Positions 50,467 to 63,800 of a DNA stretch of 64,000 bases are shown here, in pieces. Where the stretch lies: the IMG/VR virus record IMGVR_UViG_3300022868_000009, positions 248,001-312,000 of that record; one strand, written 5' to 3'. Made by a program: the position numbers and the translations under genes. Each line of letters begins with the position of its first letter. Positions within the stretch are counted from its first letter, which is position 1. Under the pieces are notes generated by a model. It worked only from the letters and a program-made list of their open reading frames with translations. It ran no database searches and was not told where the DNA came from.

Positions 50467-50661
50467 TTAGTTGTCTTCTGACTCCTTTAATTTCTGAACA
50501 TAAATCGCTTTCAATTTTTGTTCTCTTTTCTTAACTGATTTCTTTTTATAATCTTTCTTGTCCCTGATTGCTTTTAAAACACCAGTCTTAATATATTTTT
50601 GCTTATATTTTTTTAAAGCTCTATCAATTTTATCTTTACTATCTACTTTAATTATTAACAT
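50467..50661 (-). CDS. rpsU: Phage-encoded ribosomal protein bS21 (Bacteroidota type)
   Basis: MLII.V...IDRALKKYK.K..KTG.L..IR....Y.K.SV.KR....KA.Y. Confidence 0.92.
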   Translation of the reverse strand: MLIIKVDSKDKIDRALKKYKQKYIKTGVLKAIRDKKDYKKKSVKKREQKLKAIYVQKLKESEDN

Positions 50662-51878: not shown

Positions 51879-52271
51879 ATGAAAAATTTTTTAAATTTTA
51901 TAAATAATAATCACGAATATTCAAATAATGAAATGAATAAAATTATTAAATTCATTGGCAAATTATGTAAATATGAAAACAAAAAAGCAAACGCAATATT
52001 CAATTTTAACATATCAAAAAATATACTTAATGATACAGATTTTAATGCATCAGTAAGATCAAATAACATATATTCAAACGATATAAAACAAGTTACAAAA
52101 ATACTTGATAAAGTATGCGAAAAATTAAATATGTATCCAACAATAAATATTATGATTAATACATTTGGTAGATCAACAAATTATAATATTAACTGTACAT
52201 TTGAATTTACAGAAAAAAATAAATTAGACATTCTTGCAACTATAGAAGGAAATAAATTAGGACTATTATAA
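51879..52271 (+). CDS. Small dual-tag protein (leader-like N-terminus, ...EGNKLGLL)
   Basis: Terminal motifs. Confidence 0.7.
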   Translation: MKNFLNFINNNHEYSNNEMNKIIKFIGKLCKYENKKANAIFNFNISKNILNDTDFNASVRSNNIYSNDIKQVTKILDKVCEKLNMYPTINIMINTFGRSTNYNINCTFEFTEKNKLDILATIEGNKLGLL

Positions 52272-52616
52272 ATGAAACATCTTAAAAAATATAACGAAGA
52301 GAAAATAGAAAATAAATGGAAAAATACAATAGTAATTTATGAATCTTACTCGGATTCATGGGTATATGTAGATGGTTCATTGATATCAGAATGGTCTGTT
52401 ACCATATTTGATATATTATTAATATTATCAGAGGATAATGTTAATATATTGAAATATAAAATATCAATGTTAACAGATCATTTTCCTCAAAATATAATTG
52501 ATCATTTAAACGATCACCCAGAACAAGAATTTCCAATGTATGATTTAGATATATATGAACAAGAAATAATAAAAAGAAAAGCAGAAAAAGAAGGACAAAA
52601 AATGGGTCTGTTTTAA
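52272..52616 (+). CDS. Small dual-tag protein (MKHLKKYNEE ... EGQKMGLF)
   Basis: Terminal motifs. Confidence 0.75.
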   Translation: MKHLKKYNEEKIENKWKNTIVIYESYSDSWVYVDGSLISEWSVTIFDILLILSEDNVNILKYKISMLTDHFPQNIIDHLNDHPEQEFPMYDLDIYEQEIIKRKAEKEGQKMGLF

Positions 52617-52617
52617 A

Positions 52618-52941
52618 ATGAAACATATTTCAACATATAACGAATACTTACAAACACCCTTAAATTTATCAATACCAATATAGAAGATAATGATAAATTT
52701 ACAAATTACCTAGAACAATCAAACCTAATATCAAAAAATTCTTTATTTAGAACATATCATAAAGGATGTATATATCATACATTTTTAATATCAATTATAG
52801 ATAATCATTCTTAAAAATTAGTTGTTCAAACCCAGATAATGTATCTGGGTTTGAACAAAAAGGAGTAAATGAAATATTATTTGATCCAGATATAATTATA
52901 TAATTATAAGATTAGAAGCAAATAAAATGGGATTATTATGA
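52618..52941 (+). pseudogene. Disrupted dual-tag gene (MKHISTYNE ... RLEANKMGLL)
   Basis: Both terminal motifs intact, but internal stops and frameshifts; contains a perfect 17-bp inverted repeat. Confidence 0.7.
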
Positions 52942-53219
52942 AATATTTAAAGACATACAACGAATCAAAATATAAACCATCATATACTGCACGCCCAATG
53001 CCAGATAAATATCGGCTTAGATGTGAATATTTAATAGATAAATACGGTAAACTAAATACAAATAATAAAATTACACATTTATCAGAAGAATCAGAAATTT
53101 TACAAATAGATATAAATGATGATTATAGATTAGATATTTTTAAAACTACTGATAAATCGTTACTTAATATGAGAGAATTAGAAATGAAATTACAAGCAAA
53201 AGAATTAGGATTGTTATAG
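52938..53219 (+). CDS. Small dual-tag protein (MKYLKTYNE ... QAKELGLL)
   Basis: Terminal motifs. Confidence 0.75.
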   Translation: MKYLKTYNESKYKPSYTARPMPDKYRLRCEYLIDKYGKLNTNNKITHLSEESEILQIDINDDYRLDIFKTTDKSLLNMRELEMKLQAKELGLL

Positions 53220-53281
53220 ATTTAATGAAAAGGGGAATTTATATTATAATATATTTAATGTATCATAATTTAGCACCTTTT

Positions 53282-53667
53282 TTATAATAATCCCATTTGA
53301 TTTGCCTGTTTAACATTATCGAGTGATATACCAACATTTTTTTCTAACCAATTTTCAATTGTAATATAATTGTATTTTTTATAATCAGGATCTTGTAAAT
53401 TATTTTGTAAATATACCATACTACCCCCAATTAAAATCATAATCTTTAACATTAAATATTTCATAATTTTCTTGAGAAATAGATATCAGAAAATAACTAG
53501 GTCTACCACCAGAATAACGAAAAATATAATCATAATCTATATCAATATTATAAAAATCATCATATAATGAAAATAATACAAAATTAATACATAATATATG
53601 TATACATAATATTAAAACAGATGATATAAAATTATTAGAAAAAATATGTTGTTTTAAGGTATTTTAT
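53282..53667 (-). pseudogene. Decayed dual-tag gene; the residual ORF 53282-53464 ends QANQMGLL
   Basis: ATA-AAA-TAC-CTT-AAA-ACA (ATG>ATA, KYLKT) overlaps the upstream stop; frameshifts in between. Confidence 0.55.
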
Positions 53668-54050
53668 AACAATCCCATTTTTTTCGCAGTTAATATTTTT
53701 TCTATTTCAGAACCTAATAAAAATGCATTTAATTTTATGAGTATAGAATTATCTAAATCATCATATTGTACATTTCTTTCATATTCACTATCTGATAAAT
53801 TATAATAATAAATAATACCGGTTGTATTAATATTACTTTGATAAATGTCAAATTTTAAATCATCTAATTTTATTTTTATTAAATTAGTAGATGTAGATCT
53901 ACCATAAAGATCAGATATTCTATTATTACCATCATTATTTTTTTCACCGTATTTATCTAGTAAATATAAACACCTATTAAATACTTTATCAGGCATTAAA
54001 TAACAATGATTTCTATTAATTTTTTCTAAATATGATTTCAAATATCTCAT
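53664..54050 (-). CDS. Small dual-tag protein (MRYLKSYLE ... TAKKMGLL), paralogue of 52938-53219
   Basis: Shared MPDK...RC.YL.DKYG core. Confidence 0.75.
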   Translation of the reverse strand: MRYLKSYLEKINRNHCYLMPDKVFNRCLYLLDKYGEKNNDGNNRISDLYGRSTSTNLIKIKLDDLKFDIYQSNINTTGIIYYYNLSDSEYERNVQYDDLDNSILIKLNAFLLGSEIEKILTAKKMGLL

Positions 54051-54091
54051 TAATCTTATATATTAAATTTAAATAAGAATATATAAATAAT

Positions 54092-54394
54092 ATGAAATAC
54101 CTTAAAACATATAATGAAAATAAATCATTTAATGATAAAGTTAATATGATTAAAAAAATAGTAGACACCGTTGGTAAAACTGATGATAGAGGTAAAATTT
54201 TAAATTTAAACTATAAATCAAAAGGTTCTAAAACCTATCTTTTAAAAATTCAAGATACATGCTGGATAAGTATTGAGATGATAGGTACAAGATTTTTAAG
54301 AAATTTAGATTCTAGAGTAATTGAATCTATATATAAAGAATTAAAAGAAAAATACCCAGAGTTTTTTATGGGAGATAAATTAGGTATTTTATAA
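54092..54394 (+). CDS. Small dual-tag protein (MKYLKTYNE ... MGDKLGIL)
   Basis: Terminal motifs. Confidence 0.75.
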   Translation: MKYLKTYNENKSFNDKVNMIKKIVDTVGKTDDRGKILNLNYKSKGSKTYLLKIQDTCWISIEMIGTRFLRNLDSRVIESIYKELKEKYPEFFMGDKLGIL

Positions 54395-54900
54395 AATAAA
54401 AGTCTTAAAAAATTTTCCAAAAAAATTTTCCAAAAAAATTTTAGAAACAAAATCCCAGTTTCTAAGTTATACTTTGTAACGGATACCCAAACGTAATTAT
54501 ATTATATATTATATTATATACACTTTTTAAATTTACACTTTCTGACAAATACTTAATATCTACTACAAAACAGTTACTAATTTAAATGAACACTACTTAC
54601 TCTATAAAAACAAACTTACTATTCTGTGATATAAAAAGTACTCTATTTACTATAAAATAGTTAATACCTTATATAGATAATACTTTATTTTAAAATAAAC
54701 TTCTTTATATTATTTAAAATAAACTTCTTCATGACCTCATATATTCACTATATCTATATATGTAGATAGGTGGCCCGTGAGCTATTTTTACTTATTATTA
54801 TTAATCTTAAATTAGGAGGATTTTTATAATCCTTATCTATTATTATTTTTTTGTCATGGATCATTGTGACATCTTTTTTTATTTTTATATTAAGGTTGCT
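54395..54900. other. Non-coding AT-rich region with short repeats at a strand-composition switch; candidate replication origin
   Basis: (aaaaattttccaa) repeats, tttaaaataaacttctt x2; + strand changes from C/A-rich to G/T-rich. Confidence 0.45.
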
Positions 54901-54905
54901 TTCCT

Positions 54906-54913
54906 TATCTTTG
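54906..54913 (+). promoter_or_regulatory. Bacteroidota-type -7 element TATCTTTG
   Basis: TAnnTTTG preceded by ttcct, as in the other copies. Confidence 0.65.
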
Positions 54914-54936
54914 TAATGAATAAAAATTATAATGAG

Positions 54937-55488
54937 ATGGAAAATTATTTTAAAATTGAACATGGAAGAAAGGTTGAGACATACACACCTAAAGATACAT
55001 ATGTATTAACATGGAATGAAAGACATGGTGATGCTGATCAAAGTATGCCTACATCTATGACTATACACAGTATGGATGAGTTATGGTTCATGTTATGGTT
55101 TAGTAAGTGGTTAGATAGATACAGACAGTATAGTGACTTAGATGAGTATAGTAAGGTACTTAATAAGTATAGTAAGGAGTTATTGGGTAGTAGTTGGTAT
55201 ATAACTGATTGGTGTAGTGATGTGTATGATCATGATTGTATATATTCTAGTTGTTATTGTGGTGTGGATGCCATGAAGTTATATTATTATGATGAGCATG
55301 GTGTTAAGTATGAAGAGGAGATTGATGGTAGTACATATATATCTTTAGTGAAGATGGGATATAAGTTAGATTGTTGGTTCATTGATAAGTATCCACATAT
55401 AGCTAATGAGTTACAGGGTATGATATGTGATGCTGCATTGGAAGATAAGAAGGATGTTATTGAGGCTAATAAAATGGGGTTGATATGA
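54937..55488 (+). CDS. Early protein with C-terminal EANKMGLI tag; related to 59584-60093
   Basis: GDAD and LYYYDEHGVK motifs; start placed downstream of the promoter (54916 also possible). Confidence 0.7.
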   Translation: MENYFKIEHGRKVETYTPKDTYVLTWNERHGDADQSMPTSMTIHSMDELWFMLWFSKWLDRYRQYSDLDEYSKVLNKYSKELLGSSWYITDWCSDVYDHDCIYSSCYCGVDAMKLYYYDEHGVKYEEEIDGSTYISLVKMGYKLDCWFIDKYPHIANELQGMICDAALEDKKDVIEANKMGLI

Positions 55489-55817
55489 TAGATAAGAATA
55501 TAGTTATAGTATCGTATAGTAAAGAGGAGTTTAATTATGTATTGAATCTATTTAAATCTAGGGAGTTCAGTAGGTCTACGATTGATTCGTATCTACGTTA
55601 CGTTAATGATGATGGTCATTATAATGATTATGTATATCCTATTGCATTAATTGTGAGGTTTAAATTAATGTCAGCAACGTGGCAGTATAAAGATATGTGG
55701 GATCATATTAATGATTTATTAGATAGGGGTGAGGTTGATAGTGTTATTGATTGTAAAGATTTCAAAGAGATGGGTGGTGATAATTATATTGAAGGTATTA
55801 AATTAGGTTTACTTTAA
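55485..55817 (+). CDS. Small tag protein (...EGIKLGLL)
   Basis: C-terminal motif. Confidence 0.75.
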   Translation: MIDKNIVIVSYSKEEFNYVLNLFKSREFSRSTIDSYLRYVNDDGHYNDYVYPIALIVRFKLMSATWQYKDMWDHINDLLDRGEVDSVIDCKDFKEMGGDNYIEGIKLGLL

Positions 55818-55846
55818 AGTTTAGAAGGTATTCCTTATCTTTGTAT
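55815..55846 (+). promoter_or_regulatory. Repeated early promoter taaagtttagaaggtattccttatctttgtat
   Basis: Near-identical copies at 58048, 58798 and 63287; contains TATCTTTG. Confidence 0.75.
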
Positions 55847-55889
55847 TGAATATAATTTAAAGAATAGAAAATGATAAAAGGAATAAGTA

Positions 55890-56207
55890 ATGACATATAA
55901 GGTATTGATTAAGGTTCGTAATGAATCTGAATGGATATCATGTTGTGATATGTTGTATAGTCATGGTTATCGATGGCAAGACAATTGTATGGACTCAAAG
56001 AAGATACATGGATATAAGTTGATAAGTGAAGGTGATATATATTTAGTTATATATAATCATACTGACCCTCATCATCATGATGATCGTTTATTTTATAATA
56101 CTAATGTTAATGTTGATATTTATGGGCCGGATGTTATTATAATTAATTATGTTGAAGGTATGGATTTACATGAGATAATAGAAGTTAATAAATTGGGATT
56201 AATATGA
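55890..56207 (+). CDS. Small tag protein (...EVNKLGLI)
   Basis: KVRNESEW.SCC.MLYSHGY.W core. Confidence 0.75.
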   Translation: MTYKVLIKVRNESEWISCCDMLYSHGYRWQDNCMDSKKIHGYKLISEGDIYLVIYNHTDPHHHDDRLFYNTNVNVDIYGPDVIIINYVEGMDLHEIIEVNKLGLI

Positions 56208-56539
56208 TAGTATTTAGTAAAGATATAAAGAAAATAAATATTAAGGTTCGTAATGAATCTGAATGGGTATCATGTTGCAATATGTTGTATAGTCATGGTT
56301 ATCATTGGAATGTTGAGTCTGATTTTATGGAGATATATTCTGAATGTTTAGAAACTGCTAAGGAATATATTAAGACTTATGCAATAAATGATGGTATATA
56401 TTTAGTTGTTTATAATGATAATAGTGGACGGTTATATTATAATTATAAATATAAGACTGATGGTATAATAAATCTTGATTGGTATGATGGTATGGATTTA
56501 CATGAGATAAATGAAGCTAATAAATTGGGGTTAATATGA
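56204..56539 (+). CDS. Small tag protein (...EANKLGLI); recent paralogue of 55890-56207
   Basis: Near-identical DNA over the KVRNESEW...GY segment and the GMDLHEI tail. Confidence 0.75.
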   Translation: MIVFSKDIKKINIKVRNESEWVSCCNMLYSHGYHWNVESDFMEIYSECLETAKEYIKTYAINDGIYLVVYNDNSGRLYYNYKYKTDGIINLDWYDGMDLHEINEANKLGLI

Positions 56540-56841
56540 AAGAGAAGATATACATAATATTAAATAATATAGATGATTGGATTAATTGTTGTAATCAATT
56601 AGACAATGAGGGATATTTTTGGGCAAGAAGTAGTGACTCATATAAAGATAAATATCATAAATGTAAAACTTTCGGTAATCCTGAAAATTATATAGTAATA
56701 GGTCATAATGAGTATGATGATAATCGTTTATATTATGGTAATATATATAATGATAAGAAGTTTGATGGTATTATTTTATATTGGGATGCTGATGTAGATT
56801 TAGAAAGTTATTTTGCAGGTTTAAAAATGGGATTATTATAA
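56536..56841 (+). CDS. Small tag protein (...AGLKMGLL)
   Basis: CC.QL..EGYFW core plus tag. Confidence 0.75.
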   Translation: MKEKIYIILNNIDDWINCCNQLDNEGYFWARSSDSYKDKYHKCKTFGNPENYIVIGHNEYDDNRLYYGNIYNDKKFDGIILYWDADVDLESYFAGLKMGLL

Positions 56842-56951
56842 TAATATTTTCATGTTTGACCAGGGAGAATTTAGGTTGGAGGAAAGGGGATATTTTTATT
56901 TGGTGAAGGTTTGTTGTGTATTTGTGTATAAATTAAAATGTAAAAAAGATT

Positions 56952-57332
56952 ATGATAAAATGGATTAATATAAGGCTGGAAGGTTATGGTAAAGGTAAAG
57001 GTAAAGGTAAAGGTAAGAAGAAACTGAATAAGATGGTTATGCGTAAATTGTTACATCAAATTGATTGTAAGGTTGGTTTTCGTATTAAGGATGGTGGATG
57101 GAAACCAGTTTTAAATAGTTTAAAAGAATATAAGCATTATAAATATATATGGATTGCTATATGTCCTTTTGGTAAAGATATGGCTGCGGATTATCATGAA
57201 AATAAAGAAGAATGGGAGAGTTATAAAGACGGTATTGAGGCGGATGAAGCTGAGGTATGGTTGAGTTGGGAAGAGTTTATGGATTTAGATATTCAGATGA
57301 TTGTTAATGGTTCTAAAATGAATTTATTATGA
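56952..57332 (+). CDS. Small tag protein (...NGSKMNLL) with a (GK)5 microsatellite
   Basis: ggtaaa repeats at ~56988-57017. Confidence 0.7.
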   Translation: MIKWINIRLEGYGKGKGKGKGKKKLNKMVMRKLLHQIDCKVGFRIKDGGWKPVLNSLKEYKHYKYIWIAICPFGKDMAADYHENKEEWESYKDGIEADEAEVWLSWEEFMDLDIQMIVNGSKMNLL

Positions 57333-57721
57333 AAGATATAAAGTGGATAAATATAATGTTAGACTGGGATAAGTTTAAGTGGGAACAATTCCATGATGTT
57401 GTTGATTATTATAAAGAGTTATTTCCTAAATTAGATTGGACAACTGTTCAAACTGAGATACAGATACATGATAAAATTCGAAATGAATCTGTTTTTGATA
57501 TTTTAGGTTTATCTATATGTTTGGAACATGATAGTAATGATTTTAATATTAATAATTGTGAAAATACTATAAATAATTGGCATCCTGTTATATTTAAGTA
57601 TGGTATTGGTGATGATTTATATGACAAGCAAACTGGTATTGAAATAATTGTTAAATATAGTAAAGATTTCCGTGAAGAGATTGAGTTTTATTTAGAGGGT
57701 TCTAAAATGGGTTTATTATGA
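57329..57721 (+). CDS. Small tag protein (...EGSKMGLL)
   Basis: C-terminal motif; IKWINI shared with the previous gene. Confidence 0.75.
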   Translation: MKDIKWINIMLDWDKFKWEQFHDVVDYYKELFPKLDWTTVQTEIQIHDKIRNESVFDILGLSICLEHDSNDFNINNCENTINNWHPVIFKYGIGDDLYDKQTGIEIIVKYSKDFREEIEFYLEGSKMGLL

Positions 57722-58050
57722 AAAAAACAATAATATTTTTACATAACAATAAGGATTTGGGCAACTTGTTCATGTATTTACATGTTATTGGATGCAAATG
57801 GTCTAGTGGTAGACCTATTATAATAGATAGTGAAATACAAAGATTTAATTTATCTTGTTCTAGATCTAAATCTGTTGCAATTATCGTTGATGATGGTAGT
57901 CTTACTTATGTATCAAATAAGAAAGATATTGTTTATAGTTATATATCTGGTGATAAATTTAAATATTATGATCATTATGAGTATGTAGATTTTGATAAGG
58001 AGTTTGATATTGATGTAACTATTAATGGTAATAAGATGGGATTACTTTAA
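57718..58050 (+). CDS. Small tag protein (...NGNKMGLL)
   Basis: YLH.IG.KW...YDHYEY core. Confidence 0.75.
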   Translation: MKKTIIFLHNNKDLGNLFMYLHVIGCKWSSGRPIIIDSEIQRFNLSCSRSKSVAIIVDDGSLTYVSNKKDIVYSYISGDKFKYYDHYEYVDFDKEFDIDVTINGNKMGLL

Positions 58051-58080
58051 AGTTTAGAAGGTATTCCGTGTCTTTGTATT
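58048..58080 (+). promoter_or_regulatory. Repeated early promoter copy (TGTCTTTG variant)
   Basis: taaagtttagaaggtattccgtgtctttgtatt. Confidence 0.65.
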
Positions 58081-58102
58081 ATAATTAAAGGAGGAAACAA
58101 AA

Positions 58103-58438
58103 ATGAAAATGATAATATATGCACATAATGACGAAGATATTTATAAGTTATCAACTTATTTACATTATATTGGAATTAAATGGCAAACTGAAATTTTTAT
58201 TATGAATGATGGTGAAATGACAATAGATTGTAATAGAGCTGAATCTAAATCTATTGCATTTTGTGTTAAAAATAATCGTGTGTCATATATGAATGATGGT
58301 GGTTCTTTTGGTGGTGATGTTTATAATTTTTTCAAAAGGCAACCATATGAATGTTATGACCATTATGAGTATATTGAATTTGATAAGGAGTTTGGTGTTG
58401 ATATGGTTTTAGAATCAATAAAGATGGGTTTATTATGA
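58103..58438 (+). CDS. Small tag protein (...ESIKMGLL)
   Basis: Paralogue of 57718 and 58435; AAGGAGG upstream. Confidence 0.75.
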   Translation: MKMIIYAHNDEDIYKLSTYLHYIGIKWQTEIFIMNDGEMTIDCNRAESKSIAFCVKNNRVSYMNDGGSFGGDVYNFFKRQPYECYDHYEYIEFDKEFGVDMVLESIKMGLL

Positions 58439-58800
58439 AAAAAACAATAATATATGTACATAGTGATGAGGATATGATTAATTTATTAAGTTATTTACAT
58501 TTTGTTGGAGTTACATGGCATGGCTCTGCTATTATAAAAGATGATGATAGTTCCGATAATTTTTTTAATGCCGATGCCAGATATATAGATATTAGTTGTA
58601 AAAAAACGGGAACTGTTGGATTTTGTATTGATCAAGATGATTATATTACATATATGGATGATGGTACTTTTAAAGGCGAGAATGTTTATGAATATTTCGG
58701 TAGAGATTTTATGGAGTATGATCATTATGAGTATGATGAATATGTTGAAAAGTTTGATATTGAACCACTCATAAATGGAATAAAGATGGGTTTACTTTAA
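58435..58800 (+). CDS. Small tag protein (...NGIKMGLL)
   Basis: Paralogue of 57718 and 58103. Confidence 0.75.
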   Translation: MKKTIIYVHSDEDMINLLSYLHFVGVTWHGSAIIKDDDSSDNFFNADARYIDISCKKTGTVGFCIDQDDYITYMDDGTFKGENVYEYFGRDFMEYDHYEYDEYVEKFDIEPLINGIKMGLL

Positions 58801-58830
58801 AGTTTAGAAGGTATTCCGTATCTTTGTATT
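58798..58830 (+). promoter_or_regulatory. Repeated early promoter copy
   Basis: taaagtttagaaggtattccgtatctttgtatt. Confidence 0.75.
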
Positions 58831-58852
58831 ATAATTAAAAAGGAGAAGAAAA

Positions 58853-59107
58853 ATGAAAAAGAAACAAAATAAAAAAGAAGAGAGTAAATATCAATACAGA
58901 AGTGATACTGCTGTTAGGGTTGAAGAAACTGAATATAGTGTAAATGAGTATGACGAATGGGATCGCATAGTATTTTATTTATGGAAGAAGAGTGGTTATT
59001 GGTCTGTGAATGTTTTTGCTCCTGTAACTGATGGTAAAAGGGTTTCATTAGAACCTTTACAAGTAATTCATAAGTATTGGACATCTTATAATAAATTATC
59101 AATATGA
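58853..59107 (+). CDS. Hypothetical early protein
   Basis: Behind a promoter and AGGAG. Confidence 0.6.
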   Translation: MKKKQNKKEESKYQYRSDTAVRVEETEYSVNEYDEWDRIVFYLWKKSGYWSVNVFAPVTDGKRVSLEPLQVIHKYWTSYNKLSI

Positions 59108-59370
59108 AAAGATTAAATATATTTGTAAGAAGTGGATTACAGCAAACGTTGTTTCTACATTATTTATATACTAATGGTTATAGTTATAAAGATAGAAAGG
59201 ATCTTTATTGGAAATTTACTAATGGTTCAGGTGCTATTGTGGTTAATGTAATTGATAAAATAATATTAGGTGGTAACACAGGTTGGTTTGCAACACAATC
59301 ACATATGAATGTAAAAGAATTTGTTGATAAGGCGTGGGAATTTGAAAGTATGAGGATTGGTGTATTATGA
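59104..59370 (+). CDS. Small tag protein, divergent tag (...ESMRIGVL)
   Basis: LY.NGY core plus tag variant. Confidence 0.65.
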   Translation: MKRLNIFVRSGLQQTLFLHYLYTNGYSYKDRKDLYWKFTNGSGAIVVNVIDKIILGGNTGWFATQSHMNVKEFVDKAWEFESMRIGVL

Positions 59371-59414
59371 TTAAGGAATATCATATATGTATTATAAATA
59401 AAAAGGAGAAAAAA

Positions 59415-59606
59415 ATGCTAACAATATTAACAATATTATTAATATGGAATCAATTTAGTGGTTGGTTTAGAAAGATGTTTTGTAAAATTGGTTTACACAC
59501 ATGGATTAAAGTCTATTCACATAATGAAAAAGGTTGGCATATAAAGGAAAAGAAATGTAGAATATGTAATAAGGAGGTAAAAAATGATAAAAATAATAGA
59601 AAATAA
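59415..59606 (+). CDS. Small protein with C-x3-H...C-x2-C motif (DUF1660-like)
   Basis: FCKIGLHTW...CRIC; AGGAG before ATG 59415. Confidence 0.55.
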   Translation: MLTILTILLIWNQFSGWFRKMFCKIGLHTWIKVYSHNEKGWHIKEKKCRICNKEVKNDKNNRK

Positions 59607-60093
59607 AACACAAACTAAAAGAATTGAACCTTATTATAGGTTAAAATTTAGTTACATGATTGGTGATGCTGATGGTGACACTACAGAGAAGATTGATATT
59701 CCTCTTAACAATCCATATGTCGAAAGAGTTGTTGATGTTTTAAATAATTGTGATACACCTAAAGGTCATTGGGGTATGATATTAGACTCTGAACATTTCA
59801 CTAAGTTATTGAATCAGGGTAAAATGACACAGAGTGATTATAATTTTTGTAAAGTGGTTGTATTTGGTGATGACATTGATGAACACATGGAAGAGTTTTT
59901 CAGCAAGGAAAGAATTGAGGCTGACAAATTAAAATTATTGGAGATAACTGGCGATGAAAAATCATACGCTTATGAATTTGAAGAGGCTTGTATTACTTCG
60001 ATTGGACATAGTTTCGCAGTTTTTGAAGGTATTGATTTATATTATATTGATGAATATGGAGTAAAACATGAGACCAAAATAGTTGATGATTAA
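59584..60093 (+). CDS. Early protein related to 54937-55488 but lacking the tag
   Basis: IGDADG, LYYIDEYGVKHE. Confidence 0.7.
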   Translation: MIKIIENKTQTKRIEPYYRLKFSYMIGDADGDTTEKIDIPLNNPYVERVVDVLNNCDTPKGHWGMILDSEHFTKLLNQGKMTQSDYNFCKVVVFGDDIDEHMEEFFSKERIEADKLKLLEITGDEKSYAYEFEEACITSIGHSFAVFEGIDLYYIDEYGVKHETKIVDD

Positions 60094-60110
60094 AACATTA
60101 AAATGGTAAG

Positions 60111-60140
60111 GAATTTCAGAAGGAGTTCCTTATCTTTGTA
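60111..60140 (+). promoter_or_regulatory. Early promoter copy
   Basis: tttcagaaggagttccttatctttgta. Confidence 0.65.
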
Positions 60141-60167
60141 TTAATATTAATTTAAAGAAGAAATAAA

Positions 60168-60395
60168 ATGATAAAATATAAAATAACAGATGAAAAAATT
60201 GAAGTAGGCGACATTGTTGCTTATGGAATAACATGGAGAGAGAAACGTGTAAGAAAGCACGGTTATGTACTTGGTGTTTGGGAAGAATATTGGGATGAGG
60301 ATTCACAGAAGTTTAGAAATAAGGTTGAATGTGTTGATAAAGATAATCATATAATTCGTAGTGAAGAATGGTTAAAAAAGGTGGTATTGATATGA
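60168..60395 (+). CDS. Hypothetical early protein
   Basis: 75 aa; IEVGDIV SH3-like start. Confidence 0.55.
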   Translation: MIKYKITDEKIEVGDIVAYGITWREKRVRKHGYVLGVWEEYWDEDSQKFRNKVECVDKDNHIIRSEEWLKKVVLI

Positions 60396-60697
60396 TAAAA
60401 CGATATTATAAAATAGGAATAGATATTCCTGATAATAAATTTGTTAAGTTGATATCAGATCATTTATATTCTTTGGGTTATAAATGGTGTAGTGATTTTA
60501 GAGACGAATCTTTTTATGATAAAGTAACGAATGAATGTATAAGAAGTAATGTGCGTGGTATTGGTGTTGAATGTAATGGTCGCATGAGTTACAATGTTGT
60601 TAAAAATCAAACTGAAAAGTGGTATTCTCTTGAAGAATATGTAATAAAATATGATTTAGTGATTGAATATGAAGGATTAAAAATGGGTTTATTATGA
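60392..60697 (+). CDS. Small tag protein (...EGLKMGLL)
   Basis: LYSLGYKW core; ATGA overlap start at 60392. Confidence 0.75.
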   Translation: MIKRYYKIGIDIPDNKFVKLISDHLYSLGYKWCSDFRDESFYDKVTNECIRSNVRGIGVECNGRMSYNVVKNQTEKWYSLEEYVIKYDLVIEYEGLKMGLL

Positions 60698-60801
60698 GAA
60701 AGAGAAAACGAATCAAGGAAAATATTGACTATTTGTTATTTGGAATGGATTGTGCATTGATAGTATTATTTGTATTATTCATAGTATTAATTATAATTTA
60801 G
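60694..60801 (+). CDS. 35-aa single-pass membrane peptide (below the ORF-track cutoff)
   Basis: MRKRKRIKENIDYLLFGMDCALIVLFVLFIVLIII; ATGA overlap with the upstream gene. Confidence 0.55.
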   Translation: MRKRKRIKENIDYLLFGMDCALIVLFVLFIVLIII

Positions 60802-60810
60802 GAGGAAAAA

Positions 60811-61161
60811 ATGAGAAAAATATATTTAGCAACAAATTATTTCACAGCGTTAACCCCGCTTGATGATGATAACAATTTATTAAAATTAGAAAGAGGTAAA
60901 GATCCTGTTATTATTTGTACCCTTGAGAAATATCTGGAAGATGTTGATAACACAATAATCACAGGTAACATATTAAGATTAGAAATAATTGCAAAAACAG
61001 ATGATGGTTGGATAATTGAACAAGAATTTATAACACCGGGAATGTTAGAGAGTTTGAATTGTAGAAAGATAAGTCTTGACTCACAATTTATTGAAACTTT
61101 AAATCGAAGCCAGAAAGTGGCTTTAGAGTTAAAGAATATAAATGAAAAATTGTCAAGGTAA
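60811..61161 (+). CDS. Hypothetical early protein
   Basis: AGGAGG upstream. Confidence 0.6.
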   Translation: MRKIYLATNYFTALTPLDDDNNLLKLERGKDPVIICTLEKYLEDVDNTIITGNILRLEIIAKTDDGWIIEQEFITPGMLESLNCRKISLDSQFIETLNRSQKVALELKNINEKLSR

Positions 61162-61329
61162 ATTTTTTTATTAAGTAGAATCACCGTATATTTGTATTAT
61201 ACAATTGAGAAGATAGAAAAAGAAGAGAAATAAACAGAATGATTTTTTAATTCAGAATAAAGTTCTTATCTTTGTATAGACAAAAACAAGTAAACATAAT
61301 ATTAATTAATTTAAAAAACGAAAAACAAA

Positions 61330-61644
61330 ATGGCAAACAAAAAAGATTTAACAAACGCAATTGCAATAGCTACAGGCAAAACAAAAAAAGATAGCAAAGA
61401 ATTAGTAAACGTCATAATGGCATCTATTAAATCTGAATTAAGTAACGGTGAAGGTTCTATCGTAAAATTAGTAAACTTTGGAACATTTAAAGTAGTTAAT
61501 CGAAAAGCAAGAAAAGGAAGAAATCCAAGGACTGGTGAATCAATTGATATCCCTGCAAAGAATGTAGTTAGATTCAAAGCTGGTAAAGGTCTTAAAGAAG
61601 CGGTTGATTATACTGCTGAAGAAAGAGAAGAATTAGGAATATAA
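61330..61644 (+). CDS. hup: HU/IHF-family DNA-binding protein
   Basis: NKKDL..AIA...VKLVNFGTFKV..RKARKGRNPRTGE.I.IPAK.VVRFKAGK.LKEAV. Confidence 0.95.
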   Translation: MANKKDLTNAIAIATGKTKKDSKELVNVIMASIKSELSNGEGSIVKLVNFGTFKVVNRKARKGRNPRTGESIDIPAKNVVRFKAGKGLKEAVDYTAEEREELGI

Positions 61645-61667
61645 GAAATAAAACTCCTGAAATATCG

Positions 61668-61694
61668 AAGCCACCTGGAGAGGTGGCTTTTTTT
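61668..61694 (+). terminator. Intrinsic terminator after HU
   Basis: aagccacct-ggag-aggtggctt plus T-tract. Confidence 0.85.
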
Positions 61695-61721
61695 ATTTGA
61701 AAAAATTCCTTATATTTGTAT

Positions 61722-62042
61722 ATGAATAACGAAAAATATATAAGGTTTAAGGTAAAAACTCTATCAGATAGTAAGAGTATTCAAGAATTTTTATTTTCTT
61801 TAGGATATATGTGGTGTTCAGAAAATAGGAAAGAATATTATTATATGAATTTTGAAACGTCTGATATTTTATTATGTCTTGAGAGTGACTTTAATCCTAA
61901 TATAGATCATATTTTTCATGGTGATGTAGAGATATTAAATTATGATAAAAGATGGATGGATAAGATAATAAAATCTTATGATATGAGTAATTATAAAGAT
62001 TTTATTCAATATAAAAATGCAAAACAACTGGGATTAATTTAA
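61722..62042 (+). CDS. Small tag protein (...NAKQLGLI)
   Basis: FKV...SK.IQEFLFSLGY.W core; TATATTTG just upstream. Confidence 0.75.
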   Translation: MNNEKYIRFKVKTLSDSKSIQEFLFSLGYMWCSENRKEYYYMNFETSDILLCLESDFNPNIDHIFHGDVEILNYDKRWMDKIIKSYDMSNYKDFIQYKNAKQLGLI

Positions 62043-62072
62043 TATTAAGAACAAACTCCGTATCTTTACACT

Positions 62073-62378
62073 ATGAAAAAACATGAAAAATTTATATTAT
62101 TTAAGGTTGATACTTCAAGGGAAAGTAAGGAAATTCAAGAATTTTTGTTTTCTTTAGGTTATTCTTGGCGTGGAGATAATAATATGGAATATTTCTCTGT
62201 TGAAATTGGGGCTTATATTTTATTATGTGTTGATAGTAATAATATTAAGAGCAAAAATTGTATTTTTTATGGAAATGATAAAATGCAATATGATCAAGAA
62301 CTTATAAAATCTTATAACATGAATAATTATAAAGATTCTTTATGTTTTATAGAATCATTTAAATTGGGATTATTTTAA
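62073..62378 (+). CDS. Small tag protein (...ESFKLGLF); paralogue of 61722
   Basis: Shared core. Confidence 0.75.
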   Translation: MKKHEKFILFKVDTSRESKEIQEFLFSLGYSWRGDNNMEYFSVEIGAYILLCVDSNNIKSKNCIFYGNDKMQYDQELIKSYNMNNYKDSLCFIESFKLGLF

Positions 62379-62517
62379 AATTGAGAACAAACTCCGTATC
62401 TTTACATAGTTAAAGGGCGGAGAATTTTTATAGGTTCTGGGAGAGTAGACTCCAACTTGCGATATATTTTTTTTAACACAATTTTTATTTCTTAGAAGTA
62501 ATCCGTATCTTTGTTAT

Positions 62518-62949
62518 ATGAAAATGAAAGTATTATATATTAAAGCTGAAAACATGAAAGATGGTGATTTTGACATTATGTTAAAATTTGTTAATAATAA
62601 TAAAAATTTAGATTATTATTTAACAGGTATAAATATGGGGGGTATTATGAGAACATTTATATGTATAGCCGTAAATGATGATAATTATAATGAGGTTAAA
62701 GAAAAATTATTCTCTAAATATAATACACCATCACATATTACTGATTTTCAAAATTATGAAGATTATAAATATCCCTATTTATCAATTGAAATATCAATGG
62801 AAAATGAACATGCAGATCATTTAACTATTCATCCTTTGAATGATGATGATGTAGATGTTAAAAATTTTGAAATAATTTATAGTAATATTGATGACATATT
62901 TGATGATATTGATATGCATATAACTACAAAAAAACTTGGTTTATCTTAA
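62518..62949 (+). CDS. Small tag protein (...TTKKLGLS)
   Basis: Tag variant; TATCTTTG just upstream. Confidence 0.7.
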   Translation: MKMKVLYIKAENMKDGDFDIMLKFVNNNKNLDYYLTGINMGGIMRTFICIAVNDDNYNEVKEKLFSKYNTPSHITDFQNYEDYKYPYLSIEISMENEHADHLTIHPLNDDDVDVKNFEIIYSNIDDIFDDIDMHITTKKLGLS

Positions 62950-62964
62950 CTAAAAAAAATAATT

Positions 62965-63285
62965 ATGAGAAAATTTAATTGTATTAAAATAGAAAATGAA
63001 GAACATTTAAATGAATGTTATAAAAAGATAATTGATCTTAAAACACATTATCCATATAACACTTTTGTTGATAGATTTATTATGATAAAGGGTTATTGTA
63101 TTGGTTTTGAAATAGAAGAAATAGAAGAAGGAAGATTAATTTTAACATTTTTAACTGATAATGATCTTCAACGATTTGATGAATCAAATGAATTAGCTTT
63201 TAATTGTAATTATTTTAATGATATTGATTCTTTTGTTGAATATCATAAGATTTATTTTGATTGTAGATCATTAGGGGTTTTATAA
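62965..63285 (+). CDS. Small tag protein (...DCRSLGVL)
   Basis: Tag variant. Confidence 0.65.
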   Translation: MRKFNCIKIENEEHLNECYKKIIDLKTHYPYNTFVDRFIMIKGYCIGFEIEEIEEGRLILTFLTDNDLQRFDESNELAFNCNYFNDIDSFVEYHKIYFDCRSLGVL

Positions 63286-63286
63286 G

Positions 63287-63317
63287 AAAGTTTAGAAGGT
63301 ATTCCGTATCTTTGTAT
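63287..63317 (+). promoter_or_regulatory. Repeated early promoter copy
   Basis: aaagtttagaaggtattccgtatctttgtat. Confidence 0.75.
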
Positions 63318-63338
63318 AAATATTAAAATAATATAATT

Positions 63339-63800
63339 ATGGAATTAGATAAAGCAAGAATAAAAATGAGAGAATTGTTATCAAAACATGGTCTTGATAA
63401 TTGGAGTTTTGATTTTGATAGAGCAGTTAGACGTTTAGGTCAATGTGTTTGGAAAAAGAATAGTATCATGACTCGAAAAATTACTATGTCTAGAATTATG
63501 ACTGAAAGTAGAACTGATAAAGAAGTTATTAATACAATGTTACATGAAATAGCACACGCAATAGATTTTGAAACAAGGGGTAGAAGTGCTCATGATGATG
63601 TTTGGAGATCAATTGCATTGAGTATTGGTTGTGATGGTAATAGATCTAGTAATGTTGATGTTGAGGTTTCAGAAAAGAATTATAAGTGGTTGGCTATATG
63701 TCCAGAGCATGGTGTTTTGGGTGGATGGCAAAGAAAACCAAAAGATAATAAAATGTGTAAAAAATGTAAAAGTAAAATCATAATAAAGGAAAATAAATAA
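63339..63800 (+). CDS. SprT-like zinc metalloprotease
   Basis: RRLGQC, TMLHEIAHA, H..VW, C-terminal CPEH...CKKC. Confidence 0.88.
   Translation: MELDKARIKMRELLSKHGLDNWSFDFDRAVRRLGQCVWKKNSIMTRKITMSRIMTESRTDKEVINTMLHEIAHAIDFETRGRSAHDDVWRSIALSIGCDGNRSSNVDVEVSEKNYKWLAICPEHGVLGGWQRKPKDNKMCKKCKSKIIIKENK

What the first reader, a model, noticed from the sequence alone, without database searches (positions are those of the whole stretch)
55806..63317. Tag-stop-promoter DNA cassette repeated through the early array
Seen: gg(t/a)ttactttaaagtttagaaggtattcc(t/g)t(a/g)tctttgtatt occurs at ~55806, ~58039 and ~58789, with partial copies at 60111 and 63287. The unit fuses the last codons of the tag (GLL-TAA) to the next promoter. 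A second unit, agaacaaactccgtatctttaca, occurs at ~62048 and ~62384. Inference: these repeats are recombination points for gene amplification and shuffling, which would give any incoming gene both a promoter and the tag.
Basis: partly seen in the sequence, partly recalled or inferred. Interest (0 to 1): 0.62.

Follow-up and report, generated by a model that had tools for sequence, protein, structure and literature searches.

The report
Repeated early promoter abutting tagged genes
The repeated unit is a Bacteroidota-type promoter that begins inside the last codon and stop codon of the preceding small gene in a phage genome of over 430 kb, and natural strain variants show that the copies also exchange sequence, much as promoter cassettes do in T4-like phages.

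Summary
The repeat is real and far beyond chance. It is one tight subfamily of a class of at least 31 same-strand promoters. These are packed into about 22 kb of a huge phage genome (at least 433.7 kb, salt-lake and marine metagenomes).

The conserved core carries the Bacteroidota sigma-A -7 box (TAnnTTTG), plus TCCG, GAA and a T-tract at -36 to -32. In five copies the upstream gene's stop codon lies exactly 21 nt before the -7 box. The last codon (xTT) plus TAA therefore forms the -33 element. That overlap is the "tag-stop-promoter fusion".

The tag, K-[M/L]-G-L-[L/I/F], ends 106 ORFs in 69 sequence clusters. Only 7 of them adjoin a class promoter; 51 overlap or abut the next start codon instead.

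The recombination idea is partly supported by metagenomic strain variants:
- The leader after copy C is swapped for the copy-B version in four samples.
- One contig carries a patch of copy-B sequence at copy C.
- One contig carries a hybrid gene lacking 750 nt.
- An 845-nt indel ends inside a -7 box.
- Two further indels lie within 15 nt of promoters; other breakpoints lie elsewhere and use microhomology.

The closest known system is the PeSL regulatory cassette of T4-type phages. I found no evidence that incoming genes acquire the tag this way.

The parts
55806..55848 (+). Copy A. Last codons of ORF 55485-55817 (KLGLL, TTA CTT TAA), then the promoter (-7 box TATCTTTG at 55836-55843). Drives 55890-56207 and two translationally coupled paralogues.
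   Evidence: 40.9 bits; stop 21 nt before the -7 TA
58039..58081 (+). Copy B. End of ORF 57718-58050 (KMGLL), then the promoter (-7 box TGTCTTTG at 58069, a private A-to-G change). The leader has GGAGG. Drives 58103-58438 and 58435-58800.
58789..58831 (+). Copy C. End of ORF 58435-58800 (KMGLL), then the promoter (-7 box at 58819). Drives 58853-60093 (four genes).
   Evidence: (46.9 bits)
57958..58112 (+). Extended repeat around copy B (155 nt, 80-85% identical to 58708-58862). It covers the paralogous C-terminal coding region (YDHYEY...KMGLL), stop, promoter, leader and start codon. It is the substrate of the B/C exchanges.
   Evidence: (D9, D12)
58708..58862 (+). Extended repeat around copy C, partner of 57958-58112.
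60105..60143 (+). Copy D (partial). Promoter with -7 box at 60131 after an untagged gene. A 13-pair hairpin (60105-60134) overlaps the spacer. Drives 60168-60395 and following genes.
   Evidence: (32.4 bits)
63287..63319 (+). Copy E. The 31-nt core is identical to copy C, after ORF 62965-63285 (SLGVL-TAA; stop 24 nt before the -7 TA). Drives the SprT-like gene 63339-63800.
   Evidence: (PF10263)
62048..62070 (+). Second unit, copy 1. Promoter variant with -7 box TATCTTTA, after ORF 61722-62042 (QLGLI, ATT TAA). The ATG of 62073-62378 lies 4 nt after the box, so the mRNA is probably leaderless.
   Evidence: D15; 27.1 bits
62384..62406 (+). Second unit, copy 2, after ORF 62073-62378 (KLGLF, TTT TAA). 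The product of a tandem duplication of gene plus downstream promoter. No ORF for 113 nt downstream.
   Evidence: D14, D15; 23.9 bits
54890..54918 (+). Class promoter (-7 box at 54906) with an ATG 2 nt after the box.
   Evidence: 30.8 bits
61171..61279 (+). Two class promoters (-7 boxes at 61187 and 61267) upstream of the HU-like gene 61330-61644.
   Evidence: PF00216
61667..61721 (+). Terminator hairpin (61667-61690) whose T-run forms the -33 T-tract of the next class promoter (-7 box at 61711). The ATG lies 3 nt after the box.
   Evidence: (z -4.0)
62490..62516 (+). Class promoter (-7 box at 62506) for 62518-62949. In another haplotype a deletion of about 629 nt starts at this ATG.
59364..59402 (+). 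Deletion scar. Only the leader of a further tag-stop-promoter copy remains. Other haplotypes carry 845 nt more here, ending in a full copy.
56886..56938 (+). Decayed class promoter. A 2-nt insertion and two substitutions break the -7 box in this genome. It is intact (TATATTTG) in the diverged haplotype.

Best explanation
The unit is a transcription signal: a strong host-type (Bacteroidota sigma-A) promoter. It is one subfamily of a class of at least 31 promoters that head short operons of 1-4 small, mostly translationally coupled ORFan genes in one 22-kb same-strand block of a huge phage. The class consensus is a T-tract at -36 to -32, GAA at -24 to -22, TCCG at -16 to -13, TAT(A/C)TTTG at -12 to -5, then TAT. 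Where there is almost no intergenic room, the promoter overlaps the end of the preceding gene. The last sense codon (CTT, ATT or TTT) plus TAA lies at -36 to -31 and supplies TTTA in the register of the canonical TTTG. Most genes of the block end in the peptide K-[M/L]-G-L-[L/I/F], so the overlap reads as 'tag-stop-promoter'. As a by-product, the 31-46-nt identical cores, and up to 155 nt of similarity where the flanking genes are paralogues, serve as substrates for homologous exchange and mark sites where indels are tolerated. The copies therefore evolve in concert, and operon boundaries are where the array is reshuffled. This is how PeSL cassettes behave in T4-type phages. Shown: the sequences, their positions relative to ORFs, the class statistics and the strain-level mosaics and indels. 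Inferred: promoter activity, sigma-A dependence, early timing, and the recombination pathway.
For: Promoter evidence:
- The -7 box fits TAnnTTTG / TAHHTTTG, the consensus reported for Bacteroidetes sigma-A (PMC6847099).
- There are 38 PWM sites against 1 in the reversed control. 31 lie on the + strand in 22.5 kb, all intergenic or at gene ends and 2-56 nt upstream of an ATG on the same strand.
- There is no excess of E. coli-type promoters (133 found, 127 expected).
- The phage's own sigma factor is a 198-aa ECF-like protein, unlikely to read this motif.

Overlap with the gene end:
- The stop codon is exactly 21 nt before the -7 TA in 5 copies, always xTT TAA.
- CTT is the last codon in 3 of 7 promoter-adjacent tags against 2 of 99 others. 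The three CTT copies are related by descent, so they are not independent.
- In 7 other class members a terminator's T-run takes the same place.

Constraint:
- In a haplotype about 5% diverged, cores A and B are kept while the leaders just downstream carry many changes.

Concerted evolution and recombination:
- Copies A, B, C and E are 95-100% identical over the 19 nt upstream of the -7 box, where the class averages 58%, although the genes flanking A and E are not paralogues of those at B and C.
- The leader after copy C is the copy-B version in 4 contigs from 4 samples and in runs X8 and X11; the leader after copy B resembles the copy-C version in L052.
- L036 has a copy-B patch of about 140 nt at copy C.
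- L043 has a B/C hybrid gene lacking 750 nt.
- An 845-nt indel ends inside the -7 box.
- A 39-nt insertion and a roughly 629-nt deletion start 7-14 nt after -7 boxes.
Against: - No transcript data: none of the 24 runs holding this DNA is RNA, so promoter activity, start sites and timing are untested.
- The -33 element is TTTA or a T-run rather than TTTG, and the conserved GAA...TTCCG in the spacer is not part of the published host consensus. A phage factor may be needed.
- Enrichment of breakpoints at cassettes is modest: 3 of 8 well-supported breakpoints against 0.7 expected, P about 0.03. Selection for viable indels that end between genes could produce it.
- The patch and the hybrid gene each rest on one short-read contig. 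L043 also ends in 311 nt unrelated to the phage, so it may be partly chimeric.
- High identity of A, B, C and E could reflect a shared operator rather than gene conversion.
Confidence: 0.75

Rival explanations
1. One reading: the unit is primarily a recombination cassette, kept because it lets genes be amplified, shuffled or captured while receiving a promoter and the C-terminal tag. It would be an integrase-free gene-capture system.
For: Exchange between copies and indels ending in or beside copies are seen in natural variants. Tandem duplicates carry their downstream promoter with them (57718+B against 58435+C; 61722+P' against 62073+P'; D9, D14, D15). An orphan P' copy at 62384 drives no ORF. 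Tag codons favour GGA for Gly (71 of 106 against 30% genome-wide, P about 3e-15), which could mean the tag-coding DNA shares descent.
Against: Every conserved position is accounted for by promoter function or by coding for the tag. There is no recombinase, no att-like inverted repeat and no stem-loop in copies A, B, C and E. Only 7 of 106 tags adjoin a class promoter, while 51 overlap or abut the next start codon. About half of the breakpoints lie elsewhere and use microhomology. Tag exchange was seen only between paralogues. The GGA bias tends to be stronger where a start codon follows (39 of 51 against 32 of 55, P = 0.06), which fits a Shine-Dalgarno-like role instead.
Confidence: 0.12
2. 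The units are promoters that need a phage-encoded factor, like a T4 MotA-box middle promoter, or carry an operator. The conserved GAA-N4-TTC inverted repeat with TCCG in the spacer would be the factor's site. The near-identical A, B, C and E subfamily would be a co-regulated set rather than a product of gene conversion.
For: The spacer elements GAA (-24 to -22) and TCCG (-16 to -13) are conserved across the class but are not in the published host consensus. The canonical -33 TTTG is replaced by TTTA or a T-run. A, B, C and E are identical at positions that vary in the class and stay so in a haplotype about 5% diverged.
Against: The -7 box is a full host consensus. In Flavobacterium johnsoniae AT-rich motifs near -18 and -28 are more evident than a motif at -33 (PMC6847099), so a weak -33 is normal. 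No candidate factor was identified. This view does not explain the templated multi-nucleotide leader swaps between copies.
Confidence: 0.2
3. Chance similarity of AT-rich intergenic DNA, or an assembly artefact.
For: The genome is 25% G+C. Loose versions of the 15-mer (3 mismatches) are only about twice as frequent as expected.
Against: The 26-mer has 6 forward hits and 0 reverse or control hits. The PWM gives 38 sites against 1 in the control, with strict strand and position bias. The same sequence was recovered at 100% identity in independent assemblies from many samples.
Confidence: 0.01

Closest known systems
PeSL (promoter-early stem-loop) regulatory cassettes of T4-type phages (Arbiol et al. 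2010, PMC2839356; Comeau et al. 2014, PMC4122927)
   Same: Repeated composite units of about 50-100 nt. Each runs from the stop codon of the upstream gene, through a strong host-consensus early promoter, to a Shine-Dalgarno sequence and start codon. They are concentrated upstream of ORFan genes in a plastic region. Indels between close relatives are bounded by or adjacent to copies. They are proposed to shuffle genes together with their own promoter.
   Different: The host machinery differs (Bacteroidota -33/-7 against E. coli -35/-10), as does the phage lineage (a genome over 430 kb related to the 735-kb LR756501). The defining stem-loop is absent from copies A, B, C and E. It is present in copy D, and 7 other class members have an upstream terminator. 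Here the stop codon is part of the -33 element, and the upstream ORFs share a C-terminal peptide. Mini-circles were not tested.
Bacteroidota sigma-A promoters (-33 TTTG / -7 TAnnTTTG; Baez et al. 2019, PMC6847099 and references therein)
   Same: The -7 box fits TAHHTTTG. A T-rich element sits in the -33 register. The position is intergenic, upstream and on the same strand.
   Different: There are extra conserved positions (TCCG at -16 to -13, GAA at -24 to -22, TAT after the box). The -33 is TTTA or a T-run. Several copies place the ATG 2-4 nt after the box (probably leaderless), and others carry strong GGAGG leaders, which are unusual for Bacteroidota.
Integron gene cassettes (attC sites with an integrase)
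   Same: Arrays of small, same-strand, mostly unknown genes separated by a repeated unit, with gain and loss of units between strains.
   Different: No integrase was seen and there is no attC-like imperfect inverted repeat. Each unit carries its own promoter, whereas integron cassettes are promoterless. Exchanges look like homologous or microhomology events, not site-specific ones.
T4 early and middle promoter classes
   Same: Dozens of closely spaced strong promoters in a block of small host-takeover genes. A class-specific motif upstream of the -10/-7 box recalls the MotA box.
   Different: No MotA/AsiA homologue was identified. The motif and host are different.

Membership tests
Bacteroidota sigma-A-type promoter | -7 element TAnnTTTG (TAHHTTTG) | tested here: met
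   TATCTTTG or TATATTTG in 27 of the 31 clustered sites. Copy B has TGTCTTTG in this genome but TATCTTTG in haplotype L052. The two P' copies (62061, 62397) and 77352 have TATCTTTA, and 76536 has TACCTTTA.
Bacteroidota sigma-A-type promoter | -33 element TTTG about 19-21 nt upstream of the -7 box | tested here: inconclusive
   A T-tract lies at -36 to -32 (class consensus TTTTT). In tag-fused copies xTT+TAA gives TTTA in the right register, a 3 of 4 match. The published F. johnsoniae data show only a weak -33 motif.
Bacteroidota sigma-A-type promoter | Placed upstream of genes on the coding strand, outside coding sequence | tested here: met
   31 of 31 clustered sites are on the + strand, like the genes. 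An ATG opening an ORF of at least 30 codons follows within 2-56 nt at most sites.
Bacteroidota sigma-A-type promoter | Transcription starts 4-5 nt after the -7 box | not testable with these tools
   None of the 24 public runs that hold this DNA is on record as RNA.
PeSL regulatory cassette (T4-type phages) | Strong promoter matching the host's primary sigma consensus | tested here: met
   By sequence only. Activity was not measured.
PeSL regulatory cassette (T4-type phages) | Stable stem-loop (terminator or attenuator) within or beside the promoter | tested here: not met
   Copies A, B, C, E and P' fold no better than shuffles (z -0.75 to +0.6). The feature is met in copy D (13-pair hairpin) and in 7 other class members that have an upstream terminator of -15.8 kcal/mol or lower.
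PeSL regulatory cassette (T4-type phages) | Concentrated in a hyperplastic region upstream of ORFans | tested here: met
   31 copies lie in 22.5 kb. The flanking genes have no Pfam family and only marginal PHROG matches, and the one family searched by sequence (B/C) has no homologues outside this phage.
PeSL regulatory cassette (T4-type phages) | Indels and replacements between close relatives are bounded by copies | tested here: inconclusive
   B/C exchanges and one end of the 845-nt indel lie in copies, and two other events lie within 15 nt of a -7 box. The 310-nt deletion, the 144-nt insertion and three other breakpoints lie elsewhere. Enrichment P is about 0.03.
PeSL regulatory cassette (T4-type phages) | Excised mini-circles carrying one chimeric cassette | not testable with these tools
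   Only contigs, not raw reads, were available, and they break at the repeats.
Integron attC cassette array | attC-type imperfect inverted repeat at each junction, plus an integrase | tested here: not met
   There is no significant hairpin in the units. No integrase was seen among the genes inspected in the window, but it was not searched for genome-wide.

The most novel reading that the evidence does not exclude
The 46-nt unit (last tag codons, stop and promoter) and the commoner tag-stop/start overlap (GGA TTA TTA TGA) would together form a plug-in junction system. Any ORF that recombines into the array at these conserved junctions would be expressed at once and, if the crossover falls in the tag codons, would also gain the K[M/L]GLL C-terminal peptide. 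That would explain how one pentapeptide came to end over 100 proteins of 69 unrelated clusters in a single phage. In effect it would be an integrase-free gene-capture and tagging array.
Probability: 0.1. Interest if true: 0.8.

Novelty: new variant of a known kind. Interest (0 to 1): 0.5.

Why it matters
- It gives a concrete promoter consensus for a huge uncultured phage, and with it a host assignment to Bacteroidota.
- It shows an unusually tight packing in which a stop codon doubles as the -33 element.
- It extends the PeSL idea (promoter cassettes as junctions of modular shuffling) from T4-like coliphages to a very different phage and host, using natural population variants as evidence.
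- It locates the operon boundaries of an array whose members share an unexplained C-terminal peptide. That helps anyone who wants to express or delete these genes.

Tried and rejected
**Searches for relatives**
- Megablast of the region against GenBank phages: no match.
- Word-index protein search with the B/C family profile: only the phage's own proteins.
- Related-locus search with the SprT-like protein: only the same phage.
- The 735-kb relative LR756501 has 1 hit to the tag-coding pattern against 31 in this genome, so the tag is not clade-wide at the DNA level.
- G003 (166.6 kb, 17 tag hits) shares only 1.3 kb at 99.9% identity with this genome. It is probably another piece of the same genome, so it could not serve as a comparator.
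- A second tag-rich array (genome 327-335 kb) showed no structural variants in 9 contigs.

**Searches for function**
- Pfam and PHROGs on ten array proteins: nothing above threshold.
- Language-model atlas search: no hit at 0.9 or more.
- Rfam and ARAGORN on the array: nothing.
- The 62408-62490 stretch after the orphan P' copy folds no better than shuffles.

**What the tag might bind**
- I considered that the tag is a beta-clamp-binding motif, because it resembles QLxLF and the Pol II tail QLGLF (from my own knowledge).
- No DnaN-like clamp, gp45-like clamp or ClpP was found in the 434 kb held.
- One complex prediction of the E. coli clamp with a tagged tail gave no verdict. This is neither for nor against binding.

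**Read-level test**
- Only Logan contigs were available, and they break at copies B and C. The 750-nt B/C deletion and the L036 patch could therefore not be confirmed or refuted. The 310-nt and 845-nt events were confirmed.

**Rejected readings**
- ECF-type promoter for the phage's own sigma: the GAA-to-CGT spacing of 7 nt is far too short.
- attC- or MITE-like element: no inverted repeats.

Full report
**Setting**

The window is bases 248001-312000 of a 344,634-bp IMG/VR virus record. A second record from a sister sample overlaps it at 100% identity with an offset of 85,475 bp. The genome is therefore at least 433,697 bp. G+C is about 25%. The fused type II topoisomerase is 55.7% identical to that of the 735-kb uncultured phage LR756501, the nearest GenBank phage. 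The DNA is found in salt-lake and marine metagenomes.

**Observation**

- Copies A (55806-55848), B (58039-58081) and C (58789-58831) share a 43-nt unit.
- Copy E (63287-63317) shares 31 nt with C exactly.
- Copy D (60111-60143) is a looser copy.
- The second unit is a 23-mer present exactly at 62048-62070 and 62384-62406.

The 26-nt core, with two degenerate positions, has six hits in the record. All are on the + strand, and the reversed-pattern control has none. In A, B and C the unit begins with the codons G-L-L-stop of ORFs ending KLGLL or KMGLL.

**What the unit is**

Anchoring on the motif TAnnTTTG and building a weight matrix gave 38 sites at 18 bits or more, against one in the reversed genome. 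Thirty-one of them lie on the + strand within genome 302.9-325.4 kb (window 54.9 kb onward). Each sits at a gene end or in an intergenic gap, mostly 2-56 nt upstream of a same-strand ATG.

The class consensus has these elements:
- a T-tract at -36 to -32
- GAA at -24 to -22
- TCCG at -16 to -13
- TAT(A/C)TTTG at -12 to -5
- TAT after the box

The -7 box is the one described for the Bacteroidetes primary sigma factor: -33/-7 TTTG/TANNTTTG, refined to TAHHTTTG, with the start site 4-5 nt downstream and only a weak -33 signal in Flavobacterium johnsoniae (PMC6847099). E. coli-type promoters are not enriched. The phage's own sigma factor is a 198-aa ECF-like protein.

I conclude that the unit is a host-type promoter, and hence probably an early one. 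I also conclude that the host is a member of the Bacteroidota. Activity and timing are inferred, because no RNA run holds this DNA.

**Why it looks fused to the tag**

In five copies (A, B, C and the two P' units) the stop codon lies exactly 21 nt before the T of the -7 box. It is always xTT TAA (CTT three times, ATT, TTT). TTTA therefore falls at -35 to -32, the register of the canonical TTTG. In seven other class members the same place is taken by the T-run of a strong terminator hairpin, for example 61667-61690. The promoter's upstream element is thus built from whatever ends the preceding unit.

The tag itself is a genome-wide feature. In total 106 ORFs end in [M/L/I/Q]-G-[L/I/V]-[L/I/F/M/Y/S], with KMGLL 23 times and KLGLL 21 times. 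They fall into 69 BLAST clusters on both strands. The second tag position is encoded by six different leucine codons or by ATG, so the tag is selected as a peptide.

Only 7 tagged ORFs are followed by a class promoter. Thirty-two overlap the next start as ATGA and 19 as TAATG. The 'cassette' is therefore the minority junction type of the array.

**Is it more than a promoter?**

Copies A, B, C and E are 95-100% identical over the 19 nt upstream of the -7 box. The class as a whole averages 58% there. The genes next to A and E are not paralogues of those next to B and C. That points either to extra constraint, such as a shared operator, or to homogenisation between copies.

Against the window they show the following.

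1. **845-nt indel.** There is an 845-nt difference at 59376/59377. Other haplotypes carry a paralogue of the 88-aa gene (intact at 95 aa, or frameshifted), its own class promoter, a 36-aa membrane ORF, a 121-aa gene ending RMGLL and a full tag-stop-promoter copy. The window has lost all of this. The right breakpoint lies inside the -7 box (...TCTTTGTA | TTATAAAT...). The left one lies in a look-alike sequence at the 5' end of the paralogue, with the microhomology TGTA. Runs X5, X8 and X11 confirm it.
2. **Leader swap.** The leader between promoter C and its start codon is the copy-B version in four contigs from four samples and in runs X8 and X11. This is a multi-nucleotide replacement. In a roughly 5% diverged haplotype the leader after B resembles the copy-C version. 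Two switches within 45 nt, through shared stretches of 19 and 11 nt, cannot be an assembler artefact.
3. **Patch.** One contig (L036) has the last 20 or so codons, the promoter and the leader of copy B grafted onto the C gene.
4. **Hybrid gene.** One contig (L043) has a hybrid gene, with the B N-terminus and the C C-terminus joined at a 19-nt identity, and lacks 750 nt. It is a single observation, and that contig ends in unrelated DNA.
5. **Insertion after P'.** A 39-nt in-frame insertion lies directly after the P' promoter's ATG.
6. **Deletion after a promoter.** A deletion of about 629 nt starts at the ATG 10 nt after promoter 62506.
7. **Events elsewhere.** A 310-nt deletion inside genes uses the microhomology TGATA. 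A 144-nt insertion lies before a tRNA gene. The events in items 5-7 recur in several independent assemblies, and the 310-nt deletion appears in three runs.

Of eight breakpoints in the well-supported events, three lie within a cassette. About 0.7 would be expected, giving P of about 0.03. That figure does not correct for selection favouring indels that end between genes.

**Interpretation**

The units are promoters first. Recombination between them is real, but it looks like a consequence of their sequence identity and their position at operon boundaries, not a dedicated function. There is no recombinase, no att-like structure and no stem-loop in the main copies. Many events use short microhomologies away from the units.

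I saw no case of an unrelated gene acquiring the tag; tag-bearing ends were exchanged only between paralogues. The strong preference for GGA as the tag's glycine codon (71 of 106 against 30% genome-wide) tends to be more marked where a start codon follows (P = 0.06). It sits at Shine-Dalgarno distance from that start. This suggests a role in translational coupling rather than shared descent.

**Comparison with known systems**

The closest described system is the PeSL cassette of T4-type phages. A PeSL runs from the stop codon of the upstream gene, through an AT-rich stretch and a strong host-consensus early promoter with a stem-loop, to a Shine-Dalgarno sequence and start codon. PeSLs are concentrated before ORFans in hyperplastic regions and bound the indels between sister phages (PMC2839356; PMC4122927).

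The present units work like PeSLs but are not members of that family:
- The promoter grammar is Bacteroidota-type.
- The stem-loop is missing from copies A, B, C and E.
- The stop codon is part of the -33 element.
- Mini-circles could not be tested.

**Verdict**

The finding is a new variant of a known kind, of moderate interest. The unexplained C-terminal peptide shared by over 100 ORFs is the more unusual feature of this region and deserves its own study.

Noticed in passing
whole record; in the window 51879-63285 on both strands; dense again at genome 329-343 kb and beyond: 106 ORFs, mostly 60-160 aa, end in the pentapeptide K-[M/L]-G-L-[L/I/F/M/Y], usually preceded by E/N-[G/A/S]-x. They fall into 69 BLAST clusters. 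The function is unknown. The tail resembles the clamp-binding tail QLGLF, but nothing tested supports that.
   Followed up: partly
window 50467-50661 (-): A phage-encoded ribosomal protein bS21 (PF01165 in the precomputed annotation of the same gene on contig L025). It lies next to an array whose leaders carry strong GGAGG Shine-Dalgarno sequences, which is unusual for Bacteroidota-type expression signals.
   Followed up: no
window 54906, 61711, 62061 and 62506 (-7 boxes): At four class promoters the ATG lies only 2-4 nt after the -7 box, at the expected transcription start. These genes are probably translated from leaderless mRNAs. The in-frame 39-nt insertion after the ATG of 62073 in another haplotype keeps that ATG.
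   Followed up: partly
window 56886-56938: A class promoter is broken in this genome by a 2-nt insertion and two substitutions, but it is intact in the diverged haplotype (L052; runs X8, X9, X11). This is a promoter presence/absence polymorphism.
   Followed up: partly
genome 20.7-21.3 kb, 97.2-97.8 kb, 336.8-337.3 kb, 354 kb, 367 kb, 417 kb (outside the window): Dispersed arrays of a tandem repeat with a period of about 60 nt, 82-90% identical to each other. They lie inside ORFs that also end in the tag (a BLAST cluster of nine ORFs).
   Followed up: no
G000 194.07-194.67 kb (L057:1438-2034): The phage encodes a 198-aa ECF-like sigma factor (Sigma70_r2, E = 3.8e-13), presumably for a later promoter class that I did not look for.
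   Followed up: no
genome 313723 (window coordinate 65723, just past the window) in haplotype contigs L036, L051 and L061: A 144-nt insertion carrying a 46-aa ORF lies directly upstream of a tRNA gene. 55 nt of it are identical to genome 115236-115290, so it may be a small mobile or duplicated module.
   Followed up: no
window 61330-61644, with paralogues at genome about 317.2, 323.2 and 423.2 kb: There are several HU/IHF-like (PF00216) genes, each behind class promoters. The window copy has two promoters in tandem.
   Followed up: no
records G000, G001 and G003: G000 and G001 are overlapping pieces of one genome (433.7 kb merged). G003 (166.6 kb, same G+C, same tag and repeats) shares only a 1.3-kb stretch at merged 344.5-345.8 kb, exactly where G000 ends. 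This suggests a repeated gene that breaks the assembly and a true genome near 600 kb or more.
   Followed up: partly
L043/L072 positions 2525-2835: The last 311 nt of this JGI contig match nothing in the phage and encode a 107-aa ORF on the opposite strand. The junction falls at a repeated TTTTGTAAA. It is either a chimeric contig or a further rearrangement.
   Followed up: partly
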